Below, piece after piece: positions 2,155-64,000 of a stretch of DNA of 64,000 nucleotides. The stretch is from Eutreptiella sp. 'Long Island Sound 2002' (taxonomy: Eukaryota; Protista; Euglenida). The notes below the pieces were generated by a model. That model ran no database searches and was not told the origin of the DNA. It worked only from the letters and a program-made list of their open reading frames with translations. The stretch covers positions 157,852,001 to 157,916,000 of the forward strand of contig OZ038378.1 of assembly GCA_964036045.1 (NCBI GenBank). The letters run 5' to 3'. Every line of letters starts with the position of its first letter. Position 1 is the first letter of the stretch. The translations under genes were made by a program, and so were the position numbers.

Positions 2155-4614
2155 CCCCCCCCCCTTGTATAAGCTACGCCAATGTACGGAATTATTACGG
2201 TCCCTACGCCTACTGTAGCTTGGACACGGGCGTAGCTTACGCGCAATAAATACAACTACCGACACACACGTGCGCGCGCGCATGGTATGAGTGCCCCTTG
2301 ACCTCCGCCCACATTACCAAGTGCATGCAAACACAAGAAGGCCTTGGGAACATGAAAATTTCAGGTTTACACAAATGTTGGCACAAGCAATGAGGAATGC
2401 GAAGCCTACAAATGTTCGGCTCGGAAACCCTTCTTGCGATCATACACCATGCGGAACAATTGCACATGCTCACCACTTGAAGATGCCTTTGGCTGAGGCT
2501 TAGGGGCTGGTTTGGGCTTGGGCAACGTCAAATTCTTGGGAATGAAATTGCCTTGCATGTGGTCCCTTGTAAAATACAACTTACCATCGAAGACATGGGC
2601 CATTCCCCACACGCCTCGGGCAGCCTTAGCCCAAACAACTTCAGTGGGTTCATCATCGGAGTCACTAGAATCATCACTTGAGGAAGACTCAGAAATGGGA
2701 CCATCATCATCGGTGTCCGTCCCGGAATCAGAATCAGAATCACCACTTGAATCAGAATCAGAATTGGCAAAATACTTCAAATCCTCAAGCTCCGACAACT
2801 TCATCCCCTTGGGGAAGTAAGCCGCACGGCACGCGGCCCTAATATCATCCTCCGTGATGGCATCAAATGCCTCCAAAACCCATGTGGCGGTTTCCTCACG
2901 GGAAGGGACGGGGACGGGCCCTTGTTTCCTTTTTTTCCCCATCAATTTGTCTTCCACCCACCCGGCATAGTTCTCCTCCAAAGAGGATTTGAATGACCCA
3001 TTGATCATTTTTTTGTCACATGCTTGAATGTATGGAGTACAATTTGGGGCCGTGATGTAAAGCCACAAATTGGCATTCTTGAAGGCAAGGGCAACGGATG
3101 CATGCATGTGGGCAGGGGCCCCATCAGCCGTAAAAACACATTGCTCACCCTCTCCCAAAGGAATGGCATGCCGCAAAGTTTCCTTAACAACATATAGCAT
3201 GGATGCCTCATTGGTCTTGCCCTTCTTGGTGACCGTTTGCACCATGCGCCGCATCTTCCGGTTCAACCCGGTGACCTCCCTTTTAATTCGCCCTTCCGTT
3301 TCGCCCTTCCAAATTAACACCGGCTTTAACTTTACCACCCGGCCCAACTTGATACATGGGTCGTTATCTTCATCCGTCCCATGTTCCAATTTGACAGCAA
3401 ACTGCAAAAAGGCGGTGATGTTGTTCTTGTGGCGGCCGTTGATGCGCACCACAACGCGGTGCGCGGACTTGTCATCCAAACACTTCCCAGAAAGTGGCTC
3501 CAACGACACTTGGGTTTCATCGCCGTTGGCCATCCATTGGACCTTCTTTGTCCGAATGGCGCGGTGTAGAACAGCACGATACCTACAGTGACAGGTGGAA
3601 AGCATCAGACTAAAAATTAAAAATTCCCAGTGCACCAGCAGGGGGCCACATGTGCTGAAATTGGCACTTCAGGACCTATGGGAGGCATCACTTCTTCAAT
3701 GCCTCCTCTTGCTCCTCCCATTCCCCAATGTTCTTGGGGGACTTGACGTGATACTTGTCGGCTGCGCGCCGCAGCCCATGTTGCCTCGCGTAGTTGATGA
3801 TCTCCACTTTTTCGTGAGCACTTCGAAAACGACGAAGGGGGGCAGCCGCGACCTCCGCCCTTGTGCGGCGCCGGGTGGTCTTCACTTTGGTGCAGTCCAG
3901 AGCCACGGCCGTAGAGTTGGAGGCGGTAGTGGCCTCCACGCACCGATACTTGGTGGGGGGCTCATCCTCCTCCTCCTCATCCTCGCTGGCAGGGCGGGGG
4001 TGAGCAAAGAAGTGCTCCATGGTGAGCTGCCCCCATGCGGCAGCCCTGGGGGACCTTCGTGGTGTGCCTGGGCTTGGGACACGGCTCAGCCACCACCTCT
4101 GGTTCATGAGGAACTTCAGCAACGGTGGGAGGGATCGGCGGTGTGTCCGGCTCGGGGGAGGGAGATGGGGACCGGATGAAGAACTCGATTTTTGAGAGGG
4201 GGGCACAGGGGTGTGTGACCACCTGCCCACTCTTCATGTACTCCAATACCGCAAATTGGTCCCCCTTCTCCGATGGTCCCTTCATTGTAGCATCCACACG
4301 GTCACCGGTGGAACGTGTGAAAATAACTGGACGGCCAGGTTCAAAAAGAGAAGATTGCATGGTGAGCTGATGCAAGAAAGGGGAATATAAAGCACAAATA
4401 TTCCCAAAATCAGAGCCATGTGGGTTGAAGTGGGTGAAGGCTTACAACAAATGTGTCCATGGCTCCATCTAATTGGCAAATCTGTCACCAAACCCATGTC
4501 TTTTGTGGCCGCACTACATACCGTACGCAATTAAAATTACGTACACAATTATTACAGTCCCTACGCCTACTGTAGCTTGGACACGGGCGTAGCTTATACA
4601 AGGGGGGGGGGGGG
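2155..4614 (-). mobile_element. pogo-family (Tc1/mariner superfamily) DNA transposon, near full length, probably defective
   Basis: TA at 2153-2154 and 4615-4616 flanks TIRs C10-TTGTATAAGCTACGCC (2155-2180) and GGCGTAGCTTATACAA-G13 (4586-4614). A 39-bp subterminal direct repeat lies at 2201-2239 and 4558-4596. Contains a DDE transposase. Confidence 0.95.
2406..4360 (-). CDS. pogo/DDE_1 transposase (DD35D) with N-terminal HTH; one +1 frameshift near 4050 and a predicted 109-nt GT-AG intron (3583-3691)
   Basis: Catalytic motifs are NGDET, TADGAPAH and PYIQACD, with 35 aa between the last two Asp. HTH is KVEIINYARQHGLRRAADKYHV. Removing 3583-3691 joins ALK-K-YRAVLH in frame. The second (CENP-B type) HTH appears absent. 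Confidence 0.85.
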
Positions 4615-9606: not shown

Positions 9607-11172
9607 GTGAATTGTACTTATCAACTCCAACCAAATGTACATACCTGAATCGCACCGACACTGCTGCAGTGGAAATGATGATTGTGCCCCCACCCCTGGT
9701 AAGGAAGGTGTGGTGACCTCCAAGGTCGACAGACTGTAGTGAGTGGCAGTAGCCCTTGTTTGGGCTTTGTTGCCCCAGAAAAGCAGTAGATGTTGCTCTG
9801 CGAGTCACCGCGGGGCGCGCCAAGCCAAAGACGTGTCGCTCGGCAAGGCATGACATATGGCCTCGGCCTACAACTCACTACCGTATCCGGGGTCTCTCCC
9901 CAGAACACGGTGGCACCCCGCGCGTTGGCAACCGGAGGGTATTGGGGCTGATGGTGCTACGCCATGTGTTCAGGTCTTCTCGCTCCAATTCGCGATCCCG
10001 CTGGTTGTCCCGCTCATCGTCGCGCTCAACGTCTGCCTCATCGGCGTTGCACCGCCCGTCCGTGTCACGCTCACCATCGCCCCCGTCTGACGCTGCCGGT
10101 ATTCGCCGCCGATGGGGCACCACGGGCATCACCAATTCGCGTCTACGGGGGGAGGGGGGGCATGGGAGGGTGCACTGATTTGGTGGCACATGGGATGGGG
10201 TTTTCGGCGGCTGTCTGTGGTGCGTGGAACAGGGTCCGGGCAATGAAGGACCTTCATGGTACGAATGAAGGGGTTTGGAGTCCACCGCTTGGGTGCGTGG
10301 TGCAACGGTGGGCATTCGAGCTTTGCATGGCCTCAGGACGCTCCAATGGAATCAGCAGCAGCCATCCACAACTGTCCAGCAGTTAATCCGTTCAATCCCC
10401 CCCTCCCCCGGACTGTTTGGGGCACCACCACTGTTGGTTCCCCTCCCCCTTGAGTACCCCCCCCACCCCACCCCCACCCCCCCAAGGGTATCCCCACGCC
10501 CTAAAGGGGCATCTGGCCCACTTCTACTGAGGTGGGGTGGAGAGGGGCATATGCGCACAAGGGGTTGGCACGGCTGCTAATGTTTCAAGTTTGGAGTCAG
10601 GAGCGGGACCCTTCCCACGCAATCATGCAGGCATGGGATCGGCGGTGTTGGTGAGCTCACCCCTGCGGCCCTCTGCTTCTGGGGTCCGCTGCCCTGCCAG
10701 CACTGGCAGGGTCCCCAGGCGGTCATCCAAGACCATGAATTTTGGAGGGTGCTCCCCACACACTCGTTGCACAGGGCCAAGGGGTTTTGCATGACCATGT
10801 TGCACGGAGGGTGCCGCCCGCACGGTGCCCAGAGTGCACCAGGGCATGTGCGTTTGGCTGCATCTGCATGCCCTGATGCGCATGTGTGCCGCAAGTCACC
10901 ACGTTGCTCCATGTTGAAGTCTTGGGGCTATGCTCTGCAGCATGGCGCAAAACCCAGGGAACTTCAATGGTGCAGTGCGCGCGGTGCGCAGGCGGCACCC
11001 TCGTTGTTGCATTGCGCTGCGTTTCGAAGCATTTTGCCTGGGGTCTCCCTCGTGGATTGTGCTCATCTCCACCCCATCTGCACCCCATCTCCACAGCATC
11101 CCCGCCTTATCCCCCTGGGCCCCGTGCCATATGACAGGCGGTTCCCAACACTGTGCTGAGGCTGAGGTCCGG

Positions 11173-11838
11173 GGCATACCACAATCAACCCCCAACACAC
11201 ACGACACTTCAGAGGCGACGCCCCTCCCGTTCACTGTTGGCAATCCCCCGGCCCAGCCCTCACCACAGCCAACTGGACAAACAAGCGCAGGGCCTGGCAC
11301 CAACCCCCCCTGACTCGTGTGCCGTTGTCCAAACCCTTGCACATTCACGATAGCGACCCCAGGTCCTGCAGGATGGAGCATTGCACAGGTTCCGTTGATA
11401 ACCCCAAGTGCGGACCCTTGGGGTGGGGGGTTAAGCAGGACTGTCTGATTTGTCTTATTCCTCAGCGGACCAATGTGTGAATAGGGACGTACGACCCCGC
11501 AGCACCTTTGGAATAAGTCAGCCCGGAGGCTGGACGTGCTACACTTGACATACTGAGCCTGGGCCATGGTCTCCTTTGTAGAGAGTGATGGTGGCAGGCA
11601 TCGGAGTTGGCGTTCCGTGAGGCTGTGCAATGCTCCATCCTGCAGGAGCTGGGGTTGCTATCGTGAATGTGCAAGGGTTTGGACAACGGCGCACGAGTCA
11701 GGGGGGGTGGGTGCCAGGCCCTGCGCTTGTTTGTCCAGTGGGCTGTGGTGAGGGCTGGGCCGGGGGATTGCCAACAGTGAACGGGAGGGGCGTCGCTTCT
11801 GAAGTGTCGTGTGTGTTGGGGGTTGATTGTGGTATGCC
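11173..11838. repeat. foldback: about 215-bp inverted repeats (11173-11387 and ~11620-11838) around a ~230-bp spacer; third partial arm at ~17805-17950
   Basis: Arms are near-perfect reverse complements; no TSD found. Confidence 0.88.
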
Positions 11839-14940: not shown

Positions 14941-16264
14941 CTCCTCCAGGGCCCTTGGGCTCCCAGGCAGTGCGGTCGAGTCAGGTATAGACCTACCGAG
15001 GGCGACTTCTCGGGGGAACTTGGACAAGGTGCCGCTTGGACAAGGGGTGGGGGGGATATACCCCTCACAGACACTGGGCCCACCCGCCGCGGCGCTGGCC
15101 GCGGGCCTTCTCCGTTGGTGTGCCCTGTCCCCAATCCGCAGGCCTCTTCCGATTCCTTCAACGGCGATTGCTCTACTTGAGCGGGGACACGCATCGGTCG
15201 CTGCATCGGCATTTGACCGCCAGCCTGAGCCCCAAGAGCGTGAAGTCGATGATGCCGCAGCTGCTGCAGGGTATGGCCGCGTGGCAGGGGGCGGTCGTGT
15301 GGTGCACGTGGTGCTCGTCGGAAGTCTGAAGGAGGGCAGGGCGGCGTCGGCCGTTATGCGAAATGGCAACGGCGTTGTGGACAGTCCTGCGGTCATGACC
15401 GTGCGCACGGACGAGGCCTCCGCACGCGTAACTGGGCGACCCGGGAATTGCTTTGCAGGGGGGGGTGGCATGGGCGCCCGGTGAAGGAGGGGGGGGCGGG
15501 CTCCAGAAATGGGCTTCCGTGCCGGGCCCTTTGTTTTGTGTGAGGACGGATGTAGGCGCCGGAACACAAATTTTGGCCCGGAAGAGTCCTTTTCACGAAA
15601 AAAATTTCCCCCCACAAATGTGTAGTCAAACTGATCAGCGCGACGTGGGGATCATTTTGAGCCACAGATGTTGGGGGTCGACCCCCCGCCCCCCCCCCCC
15701 CCCCCCCGGCGCGGCAGGTAGGGCAGCCCCGCCCTGAACCCCCCCTCCCGGCACGGCGACCAAGGGGGGGGGGGGGGGGGCAAATGGGTTTCCCTACCAT
15801 CCCCCCCCCCCCCCCCGCAAAGCAATGTTCTTCCCGCCCTGTGCGGGGGACTGGGTCAGGAGCCTGCGCAACCGCGCAGCCTCGACCTGCCCTAGTGTGC
15901 GCATCTGCGCGCACTTTGTTTTATGGCCGGAAAGCCCCTTCGGTGCCGGGCGCGTCCGATGCCGGTGTTCATTTACAAATCTTCCCCTTTTCCAGGGGCC
16001 CAAGGACTCCCCCGTGCACATGTTGGACCACCCCATGTGGGCCGGGCATAAGTGTGTGCGGTTGCCACGGCCCAGCGTGCGCGACCGTGCGTCGCCAGAG
16101 CGAGTCCACGTGCACCGCCGGACGCGCACGGCCACAGCCACGGGACTCTTTGTGAACGTTTTCAGTCGGTGAACATAGGGGCCAGGGCCTGCGTCGTGTT
16201 GCGCGTTCCGGTGCACTGCGGAACAGGTCCGCGGCGGCGCTGCGCGGTCCCCTCTGTCTTGCAG

Positions 16265-19200
16265 ACACGCAGTCCCTTTTGAGCAGCGTGTTTGAGGAGG
16301 TGCGGTACGAGGCCTGGGATTTCGTGCAGCGGGTGGCTCTGAAGGTATGACCCCCTCCCGGGGGCCGGCGTTGGCCCCCCCTACGCCGTGCTGCCACTCC
16401 CACGTCCCGAGTCACGCATGCGGGACGCCGGCGCTGTACGGCGTGGGCCCCAGGAATCGCACGGGAGTGCTGTTGTGGTTGTGTGCGGGTGTGTGTGCGG
16501 TGGTTGTTTTGAAAATCAAACCTTTGCTACGGAAATCCGCATACACGCGCCCTCAGATCTCAACACAAAGAAGTACAGCCTCCAATGATGATCTCCGCAG
16601 TCGCCGTGCTGAGTGCCAATTAAAACGTATTATGCATTTTGGGCACAGAAATGCCCCTCATCCGCTGAAACGAGACCATATGTGCACAAGCAAAGCGGTA
16701 CTTTGGCAGAAAATCAAATGTGGCAACAGGTCTCGGCAGTCACATAGATAAATCGGCGAAAATTAAATAAGAAGAGCACCACAAAGAACACAACGGAAAG
16801 CAGCTCTGAAGCTGCCACCTGCCCATCCTTTGCTGCAGGCCTCTGGCTGCGCCCGGAACGCCAGAGGCTGTGTCGGTGTACTGACCATCGCCTGGGGTCT
16901 GGGCATCCTCCGCCCCCTGTACCACAGAAAGGCGCCTGTTGGCGTTGGACGTGCTCTGTTTGTCTTGTCTGATGACCAAGTGACGAGGATTTTTCACTCA
17001 GCCAACAACGCTTTGTGCTGTGCATCGCAAATCGTGTGCGTGTGCGTCGACGAGTGCGGTCGGCAGGGGATCCGAGGGGTTGGTCCCGACAGACCCACGG
17101 GCTCCGTGCCGTTAACACGCCAACCGCTGGAGCTCGGTCCATCAAATGGGAGTGCCACGCAGCAAAGGCCGGGATGGCAGTCAAGGGGGCACAGCACCGC
17201 AGCGTCGGGTCCGTTGGACGTGGCGAAATGCAACGAAGTGGACCTCCCCATTACAACGGCATCTTCCCCCGCCCCCAAAAGCTGCTGCTGCTCCGCACGA
17301 GGGCCCTCCCCCTACCCCCGCTGCACACTGACCTGCCTATCACAATGACACCACCCCCCCCCCCCCCCCTCACGTTGCGGGTTGTGGTGAGCACCTCCCA
17401 GTCTGGGGTCTTCGTGATGACCGCATCCCGGGCACTGATCAGGCCGTCAGGGGAGGACGCCATGGGCAGAAGTTGCATTCTGGATTCCCCCCCACCCCCA
17501 GGCAGTGCGGATGCCCGCGGCAGTGCGGATGTCTGCTTGTCATAGCAGAAGGTTCAAGGGCAAGAGGCCAATAGGCGCCGCCACAGGCTAACAGAGCCAA
17601 CCACCAATGCCTTGTGCCAAACCCCCACCTCCCTCCGCCATGTAGCCGACCCCTGCGTCTCAACACCGCCACTCATGGCGGACCTGTCCATAGCATCGGT
17701 GCTTCCTCTCCCGAGTAGTCGACCGGCCCATCGCCATGGCACATTCCCCCTCCCCTCGACAGTGTACCGGCCCATCGCTACAGTATCCCGCCATCCCTCT
17801 ACGGGGCATACCATAAAATCAACCCCCCACACACACGACACTTCAGGAGCGATGCCCCTCCCGTTCGCTGTTGGCAATCCCCCGGCCCAGCCCTCACCAC
17901 AGCCAACTGGACAAACAAGTGCAGGGCCTCGCACCCACCCCCCCTGACTCTTGTCCAAACGCCCACCAGCGCCTGTCCAATACACACCCGCCACCAACGG
18001 ATACACAAAGACCCTGAATTTGGTACTGCGGTTGGGGGTGGGGCTGTTGGACGGATGCGCACGTCCGCCGAAGCGGCGACGGTGTCTGAACTGCAGCGGA
18101 CACACCTTCTGCGAGACGGTGGAGTGCAGTGCTCATGTCCGCACTGACGCTGGATCCGGTTCGTGGGCCATGGCCTGGTTTCGCCCGTTGTGCAGGTGCC
18201 GATGACGATTATTCTGCGGATCATGGGACTGCCCCTCGATGACGCAGGTCGCGTGCTCAGTGCCGTGCCTCGAGCCCCGTGATCACGTGTGATTTGGCAG
18301 GCGCCAGGAGCGCGTCTGGTCACTACAGTTGCGACCCCATCCGGTCCCCAGATCGAGGTCTTGGCTGTGACCCTATCGCGCTCCTGCCGTGTGTTTTGCG
18401 CAGAGAAGATCCAGCGATGGGCGCACGACGTTGAGTCGTTGTTCGGAGGATCCGCGCCGATTCTGGACCGGTATGTGCGCATTTGTTAGCGGCTGTGCGC
18501 ACATCTGAGGGGCGACTTCACCTGAAGACCAGTGGAGGCGGGGGTTGGGTTGTGTTAAGGCGTCTCCGGGTCGCCTCCGACCCACGGTCTGCGCCGCCTT
18601 CCATGCGGGACTCGACCGGGCGTGGCGTACCCGGGCGTCCGGTCGCAAGGCCTGCCGCACTGCTGACAGCCCTCAGACCCCGCGGTGGCGCTTGCGGGCG
18701 GGAGACGCTGCCGTGCCCGTGGGTGTGCATGCGCGCGATGGGGGGCTGGGGCACGCCGGGTCTCGTGGGCGCGCCGCACGTGGCCCGGTCTCTTCGACTT
18801 GTTTCTGCGCTTGGCCGGCCGTTGCCCCGCGGCAGTTGGCATGCGTCTGTAGCGGCCGCTGGGCCGCAGTCGGGGACAGGCTCGATGGTCTTGAGCTCTG
18901 CTGGTCTATGGTCACCGCCGATGGAATCCCGCACTGGGGCGTCACCGCACAGGACGGTCGGCAAAGGAGACGTCGAGGTGGGCCTACTGGTGCGGGCGTC
19001 ACTGTGTACTGACCCGGGCTCGCCACCACCGAGCCCTGGCCGCACTGTGTGGCGGTGTTGTGTGTAGGGTGGGTGGCGCGCGTTGGTGCGTGTGGAGTGG
19101 GGGGAAGTGTGTGCCTGGTGCTCCGGGCCCTGGCCGGGAGGCTAGGGTGCCTGACGCTGAGCCCGCCAGGGGAGATGCGGGCCCGATCCAGGCCTGCCCC

Positions 19201-22200
19201 CATAGTCTGAAGGCTAGGGCCACAGGGGCTTGTCAAGGATGGTCTTGTGGGATGAAATCAGGGGCAATGCCCCGGGTTGAAATGCCCGGGTTGAAAGGTG
19301 GTGACGGGGCTGAGATGAACTACAACTTTCATGGTCAACATACCCGATCCCGATAATGCCCGTGTCCCTTGTGTGTATGGCTGTAACCCATCCCAAACAG
19401 TGCACCGACAACATCAAACCAACAACGCTCCTTCTCTTCCTGTGCACGTTGATTCACCCACATCACCCACCCTGACACTTGCACCTCCACCGGGGACCTC
19501 TCTCCCCAGGCCCCACCACCCCCGAGAGTCAGATGGGTAGCAAGCGACCTCGGCCACTGGGGGTCGTAGCAGCGGGAACCCTCACGGGGGAACTGCTGTC
19601 GGAATGGGGCAGCAGTCTTAAACAAGTGCTACCTTTACCATTTTCCAATACCACTTTGGCATCGGCTGCTGTGAGCCACCCAAATGGCTCAGCCAGGGGG
19701 TGCCATAAGGACGCTCACCCTTTTTTTTTACTATGGCATCCACTCTCTGATGTTTGGTGGCTACCCACCAACCGCGATCGGTTACCCACCAACCGCCATC
19801 GTAGGGCGTATTGGACACTCCGAGTTTTTTTTTTTCATTACGGCACCCCCTGGGCTCAGCCCCTGTTTCACAAGGGTCTACCGCAGGCGGTGTGCACCAC
19901 CGACTCCATCGGGGGTTTCTGGGTTGGTCCCGAGAGTGGCTGGCGGGTGAAGTTGGGTGTTCCCTGCGCCAAAAAGCGGGTCAAGAAGTTCTAGTCCGGG
20001 TGGGTCTGAGGGCCAACAGACCCCGCCCTCTCTTATGACCACCGCCTCGGGGGCCGGACGGAATGGGTTTGGTCTTGCATGGCAGACAACTCGGGAGGAG
20101 GCCTGCAAATGGAAGGGAAAGCCCAGAGCACAGCATTCCGGACCCGCTAGAATTCCAGAGGCCCCAACAAGTCAGCAGAACGAAACCTCCAAATTACAAA
20201 AACCCCTCAAATCGGTTCAATTCCAGGACCCATTGTTTTTTGCACTTGTTTTTTTTTTTTTTGGTAACCCCGCCAGTCCATAAAATGGCCCCGGTGGGGA
20301 GCGGAAACATGGCAATGCCACGGTCCATAACGGTAGTACGTGCTGGTCTGTCCGGCACATACCCCACCCAAACGCCCGCGTGCGTTCTGCAGCTGTCGAG
20401 TGGCAAAGGCTGCGGTGGACGCCTTTGAAGACTACCTGCTTCAGGCCCTTTTGCACGCGGAGAAGGAGTGCCTGCTGCACAGTCTGTACTCGAAGTGCGT
20501 CGCAAATCAGGTCGGCATCGCTATGAGGCCCACAGCTCGTGTCCCCCCCCCCCCCGTGCCCCGGGGGTTTGATGAGGCCTTTTGGGGAAGCAGTTGTTGC
20601 AGGACGCGGGTGCAGTCGTCCCAGCGTGCGTCTCCATGCGCGTTGAAAGGCGCCGTGCTCGCAGCTCAACTGGCCTGGGTTTGAGCATGTTCTCTTTGTG
20701 CTCCGGGGGGACCTGAACCCGGGGTTTCCATGCTTGTCTACGATGGGTCTCCGCTGTGGTGTTGGTCAAAAATTGCAGTTTTTCAAACGCTGCACTTTGC
20801 CATGCACGAATTCATCAAATCATCAACGGGGGCAGAGGGAGCAAAGTCGGGAGGGAATTGTAGGCATTGCAGTGTGAGAAACACAAACAATGGGGGGCTG
20901 ACAATCTGATCCACCGATGGCAGGTCAGCATCTGCGTTGGAGACACACCCGATACAACGAATGTTGTGCAACACCATTTGGCACATTGCGCTGCACTGTA
21001 ATGCTGCATAGGGCTCCACATACCCACTACCAATGCTGCCACCACTGCTGCTGCTGCCGACACTACCGCTGGCTGGCTGCCAGGCGTCGCCACATACTGC
21101 ACAGTGGCGCATAGACCGCGCTTCCAGCCAAATTGTCAAAATGTGCTGCCGTTCTGCAGATGGAAAGCCAGTATCTTGCCCCTAACGTTTTCATGTTGCT
21201 ATCCAATGGACACAAAAGCACGGCTGCACTGATTTCGGGCACAGTGTTGGCGCTGTTGGAACATCCGCAGGTATCGCCAACTGTACCTGCCCCGCTTGCG
21301 AGTCAGGGTCAGGGCTTATGCTCAAGGTGATTTTTTGACCATTGAAAACGGCCAATTTTTTCCTCCACCAACTACATGGCAAATGATGATTTTTCTGAAC
21401 CCCCTGGACGCGCTGATTCCAAAAATCCCATTTTCATTTTTGGCCGAATTTCGGGTCTGGATCACCTCCGGGGCCCGGGGGTCAGCCTCGGTAGGATTTT
21501 GGGGGGGCCTGTCAATTGAGCTTTTTTTGGGGGGGGTGCCTAGCCAGAATGCTCTGTCGACCCCCCCCCCCGGTTGAAAGCCCGCCCACCCCAGGACCCC
21601 CCCCCACCTGCCTCCCCCCCTAAAGGAGAACTCTGCCTGACCCCTCTCTTGCTCCCTCCCAAGGGCTGTGTTGGGCTCTGTGTTGTATCATCGCATGTGG
21701 GTGGTGAGGATCATGAGCAGCTGTCACAGGAAAAGGGGGCCACCCTCGTTAGCGCACATTTGATCTTTTGACTCATCACCGCACGTCAACAAGCCCTCCG
21801 CTGCATGTGGTGCTCGCACGACTGCCACACAGCGCCTGAAGTGCACCATTCGCATGCCCATTCGCATGCCAAGTGAGGCCCGGCAGAACGACTCCGCCCG
21901 GTACACTGCTGCACATCCTGCTTCTGAATTTGCGGTGAAGTCGCTGGTCGAACGCCGCGAAATTTCGCCGGGGGTGGGAAGGGGATGTCAGCCTGTGTGC
22001 GTTTGCTTCTGGTCAGGTGACCTCGATGGTGCAGCCAGTACACTGTTCGCGTTTCGCTGCAGACTTTTGGCGAAAGGCGTGTAGGACCGGACATTCCGGT
22101 TCGTGATCAGCCTTGATCTCTTTTTGGCTGTGCATGTTGTTGCTTGCGTCTTCTCCCTGAGCGCAATCACCACTTGACACACTCACGTGTCGCCGCACCG

Positions 22201-25200
22201 GGGGCAATTCCGCCACTTTTCTTTGCGGCGAACACTCCCCTCCCGAACCTTTGCCCTCCCGCGTACATCAAGAAACAGCGGTCTGGCGCGGGGCGGGGGC
22301 CAGACCGGGTTTGTGTGAGGGCCCTTGCCCCAGCTGTCCTGACCTGCCCTGCACTCACCATCCCCCTGTCTCCGTGTCTGGCAGTGTTTTGCGTCTTTCG
22401 TAGGCGCCTGTTGACTGGGCGCTTCCCGCCCACCCTCCCGGTGAGATAGGAGTATGATCGGAGTATCGGAGTATGACCTCCCCTGTGCATCAAGAAATAT
22501 TTGGTCCTGCCCCAACTGACCCTATGCGCCCTTTGGATACCCCTTGGGGACCTGAATGGACCAAGAGAAGGCGCAGCATGACCGCGACCCCGGAAACGGG
22601 GGATTGTAACGGCCGCTGTGGCTGTTGGTCAGGGGCATGTCGGAGCGGCCCGGGGGAGCCCCGCATGACTCTCCATCGCAGTAGCGCTGGGGCTGCGGGG
22701 CTGCCCTGGGCCCTCAGGGGGCCCCTCTCCTGGAAGGGGCCCCGTGGACGCCCGCCCAAGACGGGGCCCCAGTCCGTTGTGGTGTTGCGGGGCCCTGTCG
22801 TCCCCTGCCCTGCGCACTGAAGGTGACCACCTGCATTGATTTTGACCCACTTCGAGGTCCACCTCGAAGCACCTTGAAGCACCTCGAACCACTTCGAGGT
22901 GGCTTTGAGGTGCTTCGAGGTGCTTCGAGGTGGCTTTGAGGTGCTTCGAGGTCGCTTCAAGGTGGCTTTGAGGTGGCTTCGAGGTGGCTTCGAGATGCTT
23001 CGAGGTGGCTTTGAGGTTGCTTCAAGGTGCTTCAGGGTGCTTCGAGGTGGCTTTGAGGTCGCTTCAAGGTGGCTTTAAGGTGGCTTCGAGGTGCTTTGAG
23101 GTGGCTTTGAAGTCGCTTCAAGGTGGCTTTGAGGTGGCTTCGAGGTGGCTTCAAGGTGGCTTTGAGGTGGCTTTGAGGTGGCTTTGAGGTGGCTTTGAGG
23201 TGGCTTTGAGGTGCTTCGAGGTGCTTCGAGGTGGCTTTGAGGTGCTTCGAGGTCGCTTCAAGGTGGCTTTGAGGTGGCTTCGAGGTGGCTTCGAGGTGGC
23301 TTTGAGGTGCTTCGAGGTGGCTTTGAGGTCGCTTCAAGGTGGCTTTGAGGTTGCTTCGAGGTGGCTTCGAGGTGCTTCGAGGTGGCTTTGAGGTGGCTTC
23401 GAGGTGCTTCGAGGTGCTTCGAGGTGCTTCGAGGTGGCTTTGAGGTCGCTTCAAGGTGGCTTTGAGGTGGCTTCGAGGTGGCTTCGAGATGCTTCGAGGT
23501 GGCTTTGACGTTGCTTCAAGGTGCTTTGAGGTCACTTCAAGGTGGCTTTAAGGTGGCTTTGAGGTGCTTTGAGGTGGCTTTGAGGTCGCTTCAAGGTGGC
23601 TTTGAGGTGGCTTCGAGGTGGCTTTGAGGTGGCTTCAAGGTGGCTTTGAGGTGCTGTGAGGTGGCTTCGAGGTGGCTTCGAGGTGGCTTCGAGGTGCTTC
23701 GAGGTGCTTCGAGGTGCTTCGAGGTGCTTCAAGGTGGCTTTGAGGTCGCTTCAAGGTGGCTTTGAGGTGGCTTCGAGGTGGCTTCGAGATGCTTCGAGGT
23801 GGCTTTGAGGTTGCTTCAAGGTGCTTCAGGGTGCTTCGAGGTGGCTTTGAGGTCGCTTCAAGGTGGCTTTAAGGTGGCTTCGAGGTGCTTTGAGGTGGCT
23901 TTGAGGTCGCTTCAAGGTGGCTTCGAGGTGGCTTCAAGGTGGCTTTGAGGTAGCTTCGAGGTGGCTTTGAGGTGGCTTCAAGGTGGCTTTGAGGTGCTTC
24001 GAGGTGGCTTCGAGGTGGCTTCGAGGTGGCTTCGAGGTGCTTCGAGGTGGCTTTGAGGTCGCTTCAAGGTGACTTTGAGGTGGCTTTGAGGTGGCTTTGA
24101 GGTGGCTTCGAGGTGGCTTCGAGGTGCTTCGAGCACCTCGAAAGGTGGTGGCTTCGAGGTGGCTTTGAGGAGCAACACTACAGGTGGTCATTTCAGGTAC
24201 GAAGGGCATGTACTGCAGGTCTCAATTTGCCTTGTGCCCGTCACTCTGCAGGAGTTCCAAAAACTGATGGTCGAGCCCAATGCAGCCCAACGGACCGCTG
24301 CAGTGGATGAGCTGGTGAGGTCTGTCCAAAGTGCGGGGCTCCAGTGTGTGCGCGTGCCACGAGCCTACGGTCTCCCCATCGCTTGTGCGGGCTCCTGCGG
24401 TGGTCCAGGGGCTTTCCGTGTTTTGGGGGAGTGGTGGGGCTGTCAGCTCTCGACAGGGCCCGAGTCTGCGATGCGTGGGAGGCTTCAGTGCATCGTTGTC
24501 TGTGCAGAGGGTGCGTCATGCGACGTGATAGTGAACGATCGAGTGTCCACGATTGTGGACCCCGGTTCATATGGGGGGGGGGGGGGATTTTCGTGGCACT
24601 TTAATTTCGCGTGGGAAAGTTTGCGTTTCAAATTGACCACGAAATTTCCCACGCGAAATTCCGGGTTCTCCCCGAATTTCTCGCACACCAGCGGTACACA
24701 CTGTGGACTCTGGCGGGTGATACACTTAACCGGGGGGCCCGCGAAGTTTCCCACAGCGAAATTTAACACCGCGCAACACTTGGCGCGAAATTTTCCCCCC
24801 TCCCGTAATGTGAGCGCAGGCGGCGCGTGTTGTGGGGTTGTTGGCACCGCGAGCGGGTTCTTGGCATCGCTCCCTTTCCGATCGCAGGTTTGTGACTCCC
24901 GTGAATCGGCTGCAGCGATATCTCCCGGAAAATGCAGAGGTGTTGCATTGTGCCCTTTGGTAGGAGCTCAGGTTCTGCAGTTTGGGAGGCATGTTCCTGT
25001 CTGAGTTCCTGCAAGAGCACGTTCCCTATTTGGAACTCAGCGCAGGAGTCTCTCACGGTCATTCTTTCCAGCGCCTGAGGAATGCCCCTCTGCAGGGAGC
25101 GTGCGACCGCGGCACTGCCGAAGGCGCGGACGTGCAACGGCTTTTCTAACGTGCCGCGAGATATTTTTTTGCCGCGCATCGCACTGGACCGCCACCGTTG

Positions 25201-34961: not shown

Positions 34962-34986
34962 ACTTTCTGAGTGTCTTTTTTTTCTG
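34962..34986 (+). other. genomic relic of the euglenid spliced leader
   Basis: ACTTTCTGAGTGTCT-T7-CTG versus the Euglena SL ACTTTCTGAGTGTCTATTTTTTTTCG: 15/15 identity, then the A is lost. Not followed by the GT of an SL RNA gene. Confidence 0.88.
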
Positions 34987-62059: not shown

Positions 62060-62558
62060 TACCTGCTATCACCCTGGCATGGCAGATGGGTAGTATGTGT
62101 AGGATGTGTAGATGTGTACAGCAATGCTGATCGCCATTATGCAATCAAGCTAGAGGGGAGCCACCAGACTCTCTGGTTTCCTGCTCTGTCACTCTAACCT
62201 AGATGACCTGATATGACCCACATTCCCACACCTGAGCAATCTTTCATAATCTGGAAAATTGGTCACACCACTTCAAAATACCTGACCGACAAGTAGTGGA
62301 GGGATGAGCAGACATGAATACTGTGCTGCACATAATTTCATTCAGGCATTTGGGACATACGGCTTACGCGAGGGGAAAAGACGAGAAATCAAGAGCTTCA
62401 GTAGGGCATGGTGACAATGAATGTGGCACATGTATCCCTGTCACAATGTGGGCTAACAACCCACCAAGGTAAGAGTGGCACATTATGTGCGAGTGCAAAT
62501 GGCGACTCAGTGTGAAGCTTGCCCCTGGATATCTTGTTTTTCAGGTATTGCCGACACA

Positions 62559-62688
62559 ATGTCAACAGATGATCGTGTAGAATGGTTGAGCAAGCACGAC
62601 ATCCCTGTCATTGTTAATGGACTTGTGGAAAAGCTCCTTGCAGCGCGCCCCAATGATCCTAAAGAATTCATGGCAAAACTGCTGACTG
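62559..62688 (+). CDS. first exon of a protein with an N-terminal dimerisation/docking (PKA-R/RIIa/Dpy-30-like) domain
   Basis: MSTDDRVEWLSKHDIPVIVNGLVEKLLAARPNDPKEFMAKLLT. Upstream TTGTTTTTCAG acceptor (62544); GT donor at 62689. Confidence 0.8.
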
Positions 62689-63309
62689 GTTTGTTTGTCT
62701 GGCCTGGTTCACAATGTATTGTGTGTTGAGTGTTGTGTGTAACTTGAAGCACAGCTTTCGGCGAAGACATGCCATCTGATCAAACATGGGGTATGCAACC
62801 TGAATGGGGTATTGCCAACCACGAGCTAACCCCTGTTGCATTTGGGTTCTTTCCAAGTCAGTTCAATAAACGGGAGGGGGTATTGAGACGAGTGTTTTTG
62901 ACGGATCTCCGATATGCGTTTAAGCAGTGGGGACAGGTAGTCAGCAGGGCGCACACCTTGTTGTTGTTGTTGTGTGGTCTACGGGTGTCACGCAACCCTT
63001 CGCAGTGTTCGATCCGGCTATGCTGTTGTGGATAGGGTGAATAATTGCAATACTCGGACACCAAGACAGGGGTTCTCTCGAGCACACTCAATGACCCCTT
63101 GAGCGTCAGGAACTCAAAAAACAAAAATCGGACACTGAGACAGCCTTCAGCGGATTTGTCATTGACCACAGGAATGGCCCGGCCCTCATGGAGGTTTTTT
63201 TGTGGAAATCCGAGGAGGAATGAACGTGATGTACCATTATTGTTCTCTCAATGGCTTTTCACACAATACCACAACCGCATGTGGTAGGGGGAGGGGGGGG
63301 GGGGGACAG

Positions 63310-63641
63310 CAGGGCGGTCCTTAAGGGACCAGATTTTTTTTTGTTGAGGACCGCCCCAAGGGACCGCTAACCGCCAACTGCCACCAACCGCCAACTGCCT
63401 CCAACCGCCAACCGCCAACCGCCAACCGCGACCAACCGCCAACCGTCAACCGCTGCCAACCGCCACCAACCACCCATCACCAACTGCCGCCAACTGCCGC
63501 CAACCGCCACCAACCGCCAATCTCCACCAGCCGCCAACCGCCAATCGCCACCAACCATGGTTGAACATATGAGCTACACGCGGTCGTTTTTGAAAAAACC
63601 ATGTTCCGGAACAGTTTTTTTTTCCGTTAAGGACCGCCCTG
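63310..63641. mobile_element. hAT-type MITE (332 bp), 15-bp TIR, 8-bp TSD, carrying an (AACCGCC)n array
   Basis: Perfect TIRs CAGGGCGGTCCTTAA and TTAAGGACCGCCCTG. TSD GGGGACAG at 63302-63309 and 63642-63649. Degenerate 7-bp array at about 63368-63557. Confidence 0.93.
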
Positions 63642-64000
63642 GGGGACAGGTGTCCACCTTCAGCAGTACTTTGTGAAGGGGCATGGGGCTAATGTTCTGT
63701 GTTGTCCAAGTACTACGACAACAGCTCCACAAAGCACTGGAAGGGGCCTGTGTCGCTGGCATCCGAGGGGTTTCCCGGGGTTGGCAACGCCCTGCACTCC
63801 ACCCGGGCTGTGGGTTACCCCAACTCATACAAAGCGCGTAGCACATTCACCGGGACAACAAGGCGTGCGTGGTTGCTGCTTGCGTCTCTTTTCACTGTCA
63901 TGGGGTTGCACTGCAGGTTAGCATCAAGTGCCACTGCCACACCCTCAAATTCTTTTTCCGCTCTCCATAAATTGCCAATTTGCCGTCGTGTTTGGGTAGC

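What the first reader, a model, noticed from the sequence alone, without database searches (positions are those of the whole stretch)
19686..19860. hAT MITE whose TIR+TSD geometry is exactly that of a euglenid nonconventional intron
Seen: a 159-bp element with CAG...CTG termini and a perfect 8-bp TSD (GGCTCAGC). Established: euglenid nonconventional introns lack GT-AG, pair their ends, and have CAG at +4..+6, CTG at -8..-6 and Y|R at both junctions; a general MITE origin has been suggested. Inference: cutting 3 nt before CAG and 5 nt after CTG (19691-19857) removes the element plus exactly one TSD (3+5=8) and restores the pre-insertion sequence: GGCTC|AGC-CAG...CTG-GGCTC|AGC. This also forces the same dinucleotide (C|A, i.e. 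Y|R) at both junctions. The intron code could therefore be the footprint of hAT transposition, making these MITEs self-erasing introners. This copy lies inside an ordinary intron, so it is a model case, not proof of splicing.
Basis: partly seen in the sequence, partly recalled or inferred. Interest (0 to 1): 0.88.

Follow-up and report, generated by a model that had tools for sequence, protein, structure and literature searches.

The report
Jumping-DNA copy shaped like a Euglena intron
This is one copy of a very abundant small cut-and-paste DNA element in a euglenid alga; its ends and 8-letter insertion scar fit the published rule for Euglena's unusual introns, but nothing shows this copy is ever spliced.

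Summary
A 159-bp element (19694-19852) has CAG...CTG ends, 11 perfectly matching terminal bases and a perfect 8-bp target duplication, GGCTCAGC.

- **Real mobile family.** Other copies in the same genome start exactly at CAG and end at CTG, each with its own 8-bp duplication. A related second family has a copy at 63310-63641.
- **Organism.** It is a euglenid, shown by spliced-leader copies in the window.
- **Geometry.** It matches the experimentally defined code N3-CDG...CH'G-N5-6|R (PNAS 2025) on both strands.
- **No splicing evidence.** No RNA run holds this region. "Inside an ordinary intron" could not be checked for this copy, although a sister copy does lie inside a GT-AG intron. All 8 introns I could map in this genome are conventional, and no copy forms an intron by itself.
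- **Support from papers.** The one recently gained nonconventional intron on record (E. agilis gapC intron 4) carries an 8-nt junction repeat. The C that precedes CAG at 12 of 17 element ends mirrors the published CCAGG intron consensus.
- **Prior art.** A MITE/TSD origin is already published. I found the hAT and 3+5=8 step in no paper.

First readers of this scan noted the same idea on at least eight other stretches of this genome.

The parts
19686..19693 (.). left copy of the 8-bp target-site duplication, GGCTCAGC
   Evidence: identical to 19853-19860
19694..19852 (.). 159-bp non-autonomous element (family M1), CAG...CTG ends, no coding capacity
   Evidence: other copies align exactly from CAG to CTG; contigs of other copies break at 19694 and 19852/3
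19694..19711 (+). left terminal inverted repeat (CAGGGGGTGCCATAAGGA)
   Evidence: (I1): 13 of 17 positions are the same in all four ends of the two families
19835..19852 (-). right terminal inverted repeat
19759..19800 (+). two copies of a 21-bp internal repeat (GGYTACCCACCAACCGCSATC); the number of copies varies between family members
   Evidence: D2; 'goes back 36/40' joints; four units in the L121 copy; all 10 exact CCAACCGCC sites of the window lie in the two elements
19853..19860 (.). right copy of the 8-bp target-site duplication
19691..19857 (+). 167-nt unit that the published nonconventional-intron code would remove from a plus-strand transcript (AGC-CAG...CTG-GGCTC, next base A); a prediction only
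   Evidence: sequence set against the code in PMC12501133; the minus strand also fits (GCC-CAG...CTG-GCTGA, next base G)
63302..63649 (.). second, related element (family M2): 332 bp at 63310-63641, 14/14 terminal repeat CAGGGCGGTCCTTA, 8-bp duplication GGGGACAG, long internal CCAACCGCC-type array
   Evidence: a second M2 copy lies at L125 1832-2311

Best explanation
The feature is one copy of a very high-copy, non-autonomous cut-and-paste DNA transposon (a MITE) of hAT type, inserted into single-copy non-coding DNA of a euglenid.

**Shown**
- The exact ends of the element.
- The 8-bp duplication made on insertion.
- Family membership and the variable flanks of other copies.
- Pairing of the two ends in a single strand.

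**Inferred**
- It is moved in trans by a hAT transposase encoded elsewhere in the genome.
- If a transcript runs through it in either direction, the paired CAG/CTG ends would be recognised by the machinery that removes euglenid nonconventional introns. That machinery would cut 3 nt before CAG and 5 nt after CTG. This removes the element plus one copy of the duplication and restores the original RNA sequence.

This follows from a code tested in Euglena gracilis. It has not been observed for this element or in this species.
For: **Anatomy and statistics.**

**Copy number and exact ends.**

**Same-genome copies.** The ENA assembly ERZ25074135 holds the window's own locus at 99.99% identity. It carries copies with their own 8-bp duplications:
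- ATTTTGTC (L121).
- GGGGGGAC (L123).
- CTCCTGGC (L124).

**Dominant class.** Seven of the eight or nine convincing elements with inverted ends and an 8-bp duplication in 208 kb begin CAG and end CTG. They come from three families.

**The code.** A 3-nt spacer before CAG, a 5-nt spacer after CTG, a purine at the first base of the next exon and paired ends suffice for splicing of natural and fully synthetic introns (PMC12501133). This element meets every item on both strands. Its ends pair in RNA folds.
Against: - No autonomous hAT element with these ends was found in the window or in the fetched loci, so the superfamily rests on the 8-bp duplication and the CAGGG ends.
- The usual hAT target pattern nTnnnnAn is not seen (T at position 2 in 6/17 ends, A at position 7 in 6/17).
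- No RNA data cover the locus.
- All 8 introns I could map in this genome are GT-AG. I have therefore not verified that this species removes nonconventional introns at all.
Confidence: 0.8

Rival explanations
1. General origin hypothesis. Euglenid nonconventional introns are, by descent, hAT-type MITE insertions. The 3-nt and 5-nt spacers of the splicing code exist because together they equal the 8-bp duplication, so excision restores the interrupted exon.
For: - Spacers of 3 + 5 are shown by experiment.
- CAG is the usual hAT terminal triplet (my own knowledge of Ac, hobo, Hermes and Tol2).
- The only strain-specific, recently gained nonconventional intron on record, gapC intron 4 of E. agilis ACOI 323, has an eight-nucleotide junction repeat directly abutting inverted ends. 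It reads GTCCC|aac-cat...atg-gtccc|AAC. Its authors attributed the repeat to double-strand-break repair.
- 84.4% of E. agilis introns have junction direct repeats.
- The base before CAG is C at 12 of 17 element ends here (P = 3e-4). This matches the E. gracilis intron consensus CCAGG at +3..+7 and the C at exon position +3, as a duplicated target preference would predict.
Against: - No copy seen here forms an intron by itself. One copy lies inside a GT-AG intron, and a remnant of the second family lies inside another.
- Older shared E. agilis introns show only weak repeat remnants. My hand count of Tables S1-S3 gives 79/230 and 62/138 matches, against roughly 31% and 34% expected under the Y|R rule.
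- The young gapC intron ends CAT...ATG, not CAG...CTG.
- Synthetic introns without any duplication splice well, so the spacing may be set by the enzyme alone.
Confidence: 0.4
2. Coincidence. The element is an ordinary MITE. The match to the intron code arises because any element with CAG...CTG paired ends fits a permissive code. The 3+5 spacing reflects how an RNA enzyme measures from a helix, not transposition.
For: - The code is loose (CDG/CH'G, N5-6, any spacer sequence).
- 8/8 mapped introns in this genome are conventional.
- The purine requirement is met by only 11 of 17 ends, close to base composition.
- The second element in the window fails it.
Against: Several independent features line up beyond spacer length:
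- The CAGG ends.
- The C before CAG.
- The same Y|R rule at both junctions.
- The 8-nt repeat in the one young intron.

Confidence: 0.45
3. The element belongs to another superfamily that can also make 8-bp duplications (for example Mutator-like, P or Zisupton) rather than hAT.
For: No transposase was linked to it. The hAT target consensus is not seen.
Against: - The duplication is exactly 8 bp in 6 of 6 complete copies of two families.
- The ends fit the hAT terminal pattern YARNG.
- Earlier notes of this scan report abundant hAT transposons in this genome (not checked by me).
Confidence: 0.1

Closest known systems
hAT-superfamily MITEs (non-autonomous Ac/Ds-like elements)
   Same: 8-bp target duplication, short inverted ends starting CAG, internal short repeats, no coding capacity, many copies, frequent location in introns of genes.
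   Different: No autonomous partner was identified here. The target preference is C just before CAG, not nTnnnnAn. The host is a euglenid, where such families are scarcely described in the papers I could search.
Euglenid nonconventional introns (Milanowski 2014 and 2016; Nomura et al., PNAS 2025, PMC12501133)
   Same: CAG at +4..+6, CTG at -8..-6, 3-nt and 5-nt spacers, purine after the 3' cut, paired ends, no GT-AG.
   Different: This copy is not shown to lie in an exon, to be transcribed or to be removed. It is a repeat-family member, and no paper I read describes nonconventional introns as repeat-family members.
gapC intron 4 of Euglena agilis ACOI 323 (PMC4770533)
   Same: About 154 bp plus an eight-nucleotide direct repeat flanking inverted ends. 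It is the same architecture as this element, and it is a real, recently gained nonconventional intron.
   Different: Its ends are CAT...ATG. Its authors explained the repeat by double-strand-break repair. No sequence relation to the families here is known.
Introners (intron-generating transposons of Micromonas, dinoflagellates and others; reviewed in PMC11282704)
   Same: Short DNA transposons whose ends and target duplication supply the signals for removal from RNA.
   Different: Introners are removed by the spliceosome and are found as introns in many genes. Here removal would be by the non-spliceosomal euglenid pathway, and no copy has been seen acting as an intron.

Membership tests
hAT-type MITE | 8-bp target-site duplication | tested here: met
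   The window copy, three further complete M1 copies and two M2 copies each have their own perfect 8-bp repeat
hAT-type MITE | terminal inverted repeats fitting the hAT end pattern YARNG | tested here: met
   All four ends of both families begin CAGGG; the pattern itself is from my own knowledge
hAT-type MITE | short, non-coding, multi-copy, conserved ends with unrelated flanks | tested here: met
   159-374 bp; depth and loose ends; alignment A2
hAT-type MITE | an autonomous element with the same ends that encodes a hAT transposase | not tested
   None in the window or in loci L121-L128 (Pfam, and the gene tables). Earlier notes report hAT transposons elsewhere in this genome
hAT-type MITE | target preference nTnnnnAn (weak, not universal) | tested here: not met
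   T at position 2 in 6/17 ends and A at position 7 in 6/17; instead C at position 8 in 12/17
euglenid nonconventional intron | interrupts a transcribed gene and is absent from the mature mRNA | not testable with these tools
   No RNA run holds 15000-24999; the four runs laid on it are DNA-like; no coding evidence beside the element
euglenid nonconventional intron | cis code N3-CDG...CH'G-N5-6 followed by a purine | tested here: met
   Plus strand AGC-CAG...CTG-GGCTC|A; minus strand GCC-CAG...CTG-GCTGA|G (one search set)
euglenid nonconventional intron | intron ends pair in the RNA | tested here: met
introner (intron-generating transposon) | family copies themselves constitute introns of genes | tested here: not met
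   Of the copies I could place, one M1 copy and one M2 remnant lie inside GT-AG introns of a DEAD-box helicase gene. None is flush with exon ends. The sample is only about 10 copies

The most novel reading that the evidence does not exclude
Euglenid nonconventional introns are hAT-type MITE insertions that the cell erases at the RNA level. The 3-nt plus 5-nt spacers of the experimentally defined splicing code are the two parts of the 8-bp target duplication. The CCAGG intron consensus, and the same Y|R and C(+3) rules at both junctions, are the transposon end plus its duplicated target preference. Families such as the one here would then be a living source of new introns.
Probability: 0.38. 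Interest if true: 0.85.

Novelty: new member of a known kind. Interest (0 to 1): 0.5.

Why it matters
How euglenid nonconventional introns arose, and how they are removed, has been open since the early 1990s. A MITE origin with TSD-like repeats is already in print (PMC3935182, PMC11282704, PMC12501133). I found hAT, an 8-bp duplication, or the reading 3 + 5 = 8 in none of those three papers, and no other paper in the library links hAT elements to Euglena introns.

If the link is right, it would explain the odd asymmetric spacing of the code. It would also explain why most junctions can be slid, and why these introns are gained so often. It would add a non-spliceosomal case to the transposon-made introns.

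The idea can be tested at once with existing E. agilis and E. gracilis intron sets, and with the published knock-in assay. This particular copy adds only a clean example of the architecture. It adds no evidence of function.

Tried and rejected
- **RNA evidence.** Both run searches gave only DNA-like runs with real coverage. The three small 2013 RNA runs hold none of 15000-24999. The single read-laying run therefore showed copy number and element ends but no splicing.
- **Metagenome scan.** A scan with the 14 specified bases of the terminal repeat gave 120 single chance hits and no element.
- **Finding introns in the window.** ORF and Pfam screens show a gene-poor, repeat-rich stretch. A guessed P450 gene near 20.3-21.3 kb had no supporting motif and was dropped.
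- **Retro-copy as cDNA.** I tried to use the SL-headed RING retro-copy to map introns of its parent gene. The only close hit is the same locus in another assembly.
- **Helicase ORF in L124.** It proved to be a multi-copy, transposon-type gene rather than a host gene.
- **Intron mapping with a transcript-derived helicase protein.** This worked, but gave only GT-AG introns.
- **tRNA-like look of an insert.** The extra insert in long family members is not called a tRNA by ARAGORN.
- **Supplements.** Those of PMC12501133 and PMC3935182 are not held, so the published distribution of sliding distances could not be read.

Full report
**What is there**

The sequence reads GGCTCAGC at 19686-19693, then a 159-bp element at 19694-19852, then GGCTCAGC again at 19853-19860. 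The element starts CAGGGGGTGCC and ends with the reverse complement of that. The repeat finder gives arms of 19 nt at 89%.

My scan of all perfect 8-mer repeat pairs in the window (63,030 pairs) finds only two with ends matching at 13 or more of 14 positions just inside them that are not palindromes or simple repeats. These are this element and a second one at 63310-63641, with duplication GGGGACAG and ends matching 14/14. About 0.03 are expected by chance.

**It is a mobile family**

I laid four runs on 17000-22999. The unique flanks have word depth of about 22 in run X1, while the bin 19600-19799 reaches about 143,000. Contigs of other copies break away exactly at 19694 (33 in X1, 23 in X3 at 19693, 17 in X8, with unrelated flanks) and at 19852/19853. 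All four runs behave as DNA.

Translating the open frame through the element and searching the protein collection returned five small ORFs on long contigs of ENA assembly ERZ25074135. That assembly is the same genome. Its contig ctg8613 matches window 25541-46497 at 99.99% over 20,958 bases.

The fetched loci hold three more complete copies:
- L121 10012-10225, duplication ATTTTGTC.
- L123 10129-10471, duplication GGGGGGAC.
- L124 10063-10436, duplication CTCCTGGC.

They also hold two truncated copies. In the alignment, similarity begins at CAG and stops at CTG, and the flanks are unrelated.

The second window element has a sister copy at L125 1832-2311 (duplication GGTTAGGG) and a remnant in L121. 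The four ends of the two families share 13 of 17 positions, CAGGGnGnnCCnTAAnG. All ten exact CCAACCGCC sites of the window lie inside the two elements, against 1.1 expected.

A third CAG...CTG family with an 8-bp duplication lies at L125 11227-12764. In 208 kb, seven of the eight or nine convincing elements with inverted ends and an 8-bp duplication have CAG...CTG ends.

**Organism**

The 13-mer TTTCTGAGTGTCT, part of the euglenid spliced leader, heads retro-copies at 34964 and 44972. The same 13-mer occurs in papers on Euglena gracilis, E. longa and Eutreptiella, whose leader is given as ACACUUUCUGAGUGUCUAUUUUUUUUCG. I could not name the species.

**The match to the intron code**

Nomura et al. 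(PMC12501133) showed the following by knock-in in E. gracilis:
- The CAG and CTG triplets are required.
- The spacer before CAG must be 3 nt.
- The spacer after CTG is 5 nt, and 6 nt is tolerated.
- The first base of the next exon must be a purine.
- No base is required at the donor side.
- Fully synthetic 50-bp introns built on these rules are spliced.

The element with its duplication reads AGC-CAG...CTG-GGCTC|A on the plus strand and GCC-CAG...CTG-GCTGA|G on the minus strand. It meets every item in both directions, and its ends pair in RNA folds.

Any element with CAG...CTG ends and an 8-bp duplication would, if cut this way, leave the original sequence. The purine rule adds a condition. 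Duplication position 6 must be a purine for one direction, and position 3 a pyrimidine for the other. The second window element fails in both directions. Across 17 ends, position 6 is a purine in 11, which is not different from base composition.

**What could not be shown**

No RNA run holds 15000-24999. There is therefore no evidence that this copy is transcribed, spliced or inside an intron. I found no coding signal beside it.

A sister copy can be placed. L121 carries a DDX3-like DEAD-box helicase gene. I mapped its exons with a transcript-derived protein from EukProt, P0007. Its five introns are all GT-AG. The M1 copy sits inside intron 3 (9935-10540), and an M2 remnant sits inside intron 5. 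A paralogue in L126 has three introns, again all GT-AG.

So 8 of 8 introns I could map in this genome are conventional. No family copy is flush with exon ends. I have not verified a single nonconventional intron in this species.

**What the papers add**

- A MITE origin was proposed in 2013 (PMC3935182) and repeated in 2025.
- A 2024 review already calls the CAG/CTG pair TIRs and the junction repeats TSD-like (PMC11282704).
- None of those three papers mentions hAT, and neither of the two I checked for a junction-repeat length (PMC12501133, PMC11282704) gives an 8-bp duplication. Searches for hAT together with Euglena and introns found no relevant paper.
- Milanowski et al. 2016 describe the only recently gained nonconventional intron known within a species, gapC intron 4 of E. 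agilis ACOI 323. They state that it has eight-nucleotide direct repeats, longer than in any other intron they studied, and they attribute this to double-strand-break repair.
- Their table reads GTCCC|aac-cat...atg-gtccc|AAC. That is an 8-nt repeat directly abutting inverted ends, which is the architecture of a MITE with an 8-bp duplication.
- 84.4% of E. agilis introns have junction direct repeats.
- The E. gracilis consensus is CCAGG at +3..+7 and CCTG at -9..-6.
- The older rules are pyrimidine|purine at both junctions and C at exon position +3.
- In my data the base before CAG is C at 12 of 17 ends. This gives P = 3e-4 against base composition. The background is 22% C before CAGGG. A duplicated target preference would put that C both at intron +3 and at exon +3, as published.

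**Evidence against the general idea**

- Older, shared E. agilis introns show only weak remnants. My hand count of Tables S1-S3 gives 79/230 matches on the 5-nt side and 62/138 on the 3-nt side. I expect roughly 31% and 34% from the Y|R rule alone.
- The rows of that count are not independent, and I left out entries with odd spacing or apparent copy errors.
- The young gapC intron ends CAT...ATG.

**Verdict**

The element is an ordinary, well-defined hAT-like MITE. The geometric point is correct, and it gains weight from the experimental code and from the 8-nt repeat of the one young intron. This locus gives no evidence of function.

The same idea was noted by first readers on at least eight other stretches of this genome. 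One earlier follow-up reached the same limit.

Noticed in passing
window 63310-63641: Second MITE of a related family: 332 bp, ends matching 14/14, duplication GGGGACAG, long CCAACCGCC-type array. It lies about 620 bp downstream of a likely first exon.
   Followed up: yes
window 62545-62687 (+): Likely gene start: a pyrimidine tract and AG, then ATG at 62559, 43 codons that look like a Dpy-30/RIIa-type docking helix by eye, then a GT donor. No Pfam hit.
   Followed up: partly
window 32.5-36.5 kb, 43.5-47.3 kb: A segment of several kb is present two to three times at 96-99% identity. It includes two copies of the SL-headed intronless RING gene (34971 and about 44980).
   Followed up: partly
window 25541-46497 = L127: ENA assembly ERZ25074135, contig ctg8613 (205 kb), is the same locus at 99.99%. 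That assembly gives access to the rest of this genome through ORF look-ups.
   Followed up: yes
L121 5917-13100 and L126 10001-15300: Two DDX3-like helicase paralogues (about 75-85% alike) have five and three introns, all GT-AG. None is at a shared position, which suggests fast turnover of conventional introns.
   Followed up: partly
L123 10190-10375, L124 10124-10320, L122 10235 onward: Long members of the MITE family carry an extra insert of about 190-215 bp at the point matching window 19754. Loose ends at 19754 show that many copies have it. ARAGORN calls no tRNA there.
   Followed up: partly
window 17400-17600, 21200-21600, 22000-22200: Other very high-copy repeats, with word depth up to about 266,000 against about 22 for unique DNA. 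Families not identified.
   Followed up: no
window 2409-3668 (-): 420-codon open frame with a weak DDE_1 (pogo/Tc1-type transposase) match, E = 2e-4, just under the Pfam cut-off.
   Followed up: no
L124 5244-6449 (-): AAA_11 helicase ORF with at least 57 relatives at 50-77% identity, all from the same assembly. It is a multi-copy, transposon-type gene.
   Followed up: partly
L123 257-4300; L128 189-3041 and 12973-13795: Arrays of short palindromic units, for example around CCGGAACATGTTCCGG. They flood any scan for inverted repeats.
   Followed up: no
window 19000-20600: Two estuary metatranscriptome runs and one estuary metagenome hold 6-13% of the sampled words. This could be the MITE or a neighbouring repeat in wild relatives.
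   Followed up: no
window 11373-11638: 266-nt unit with perfectly matching inverted ends that continue outward through a palindromic CCTGCAGG. It is a long hairpin-type inverted repeat, not a duplication-flanked element.
   Followed up: no
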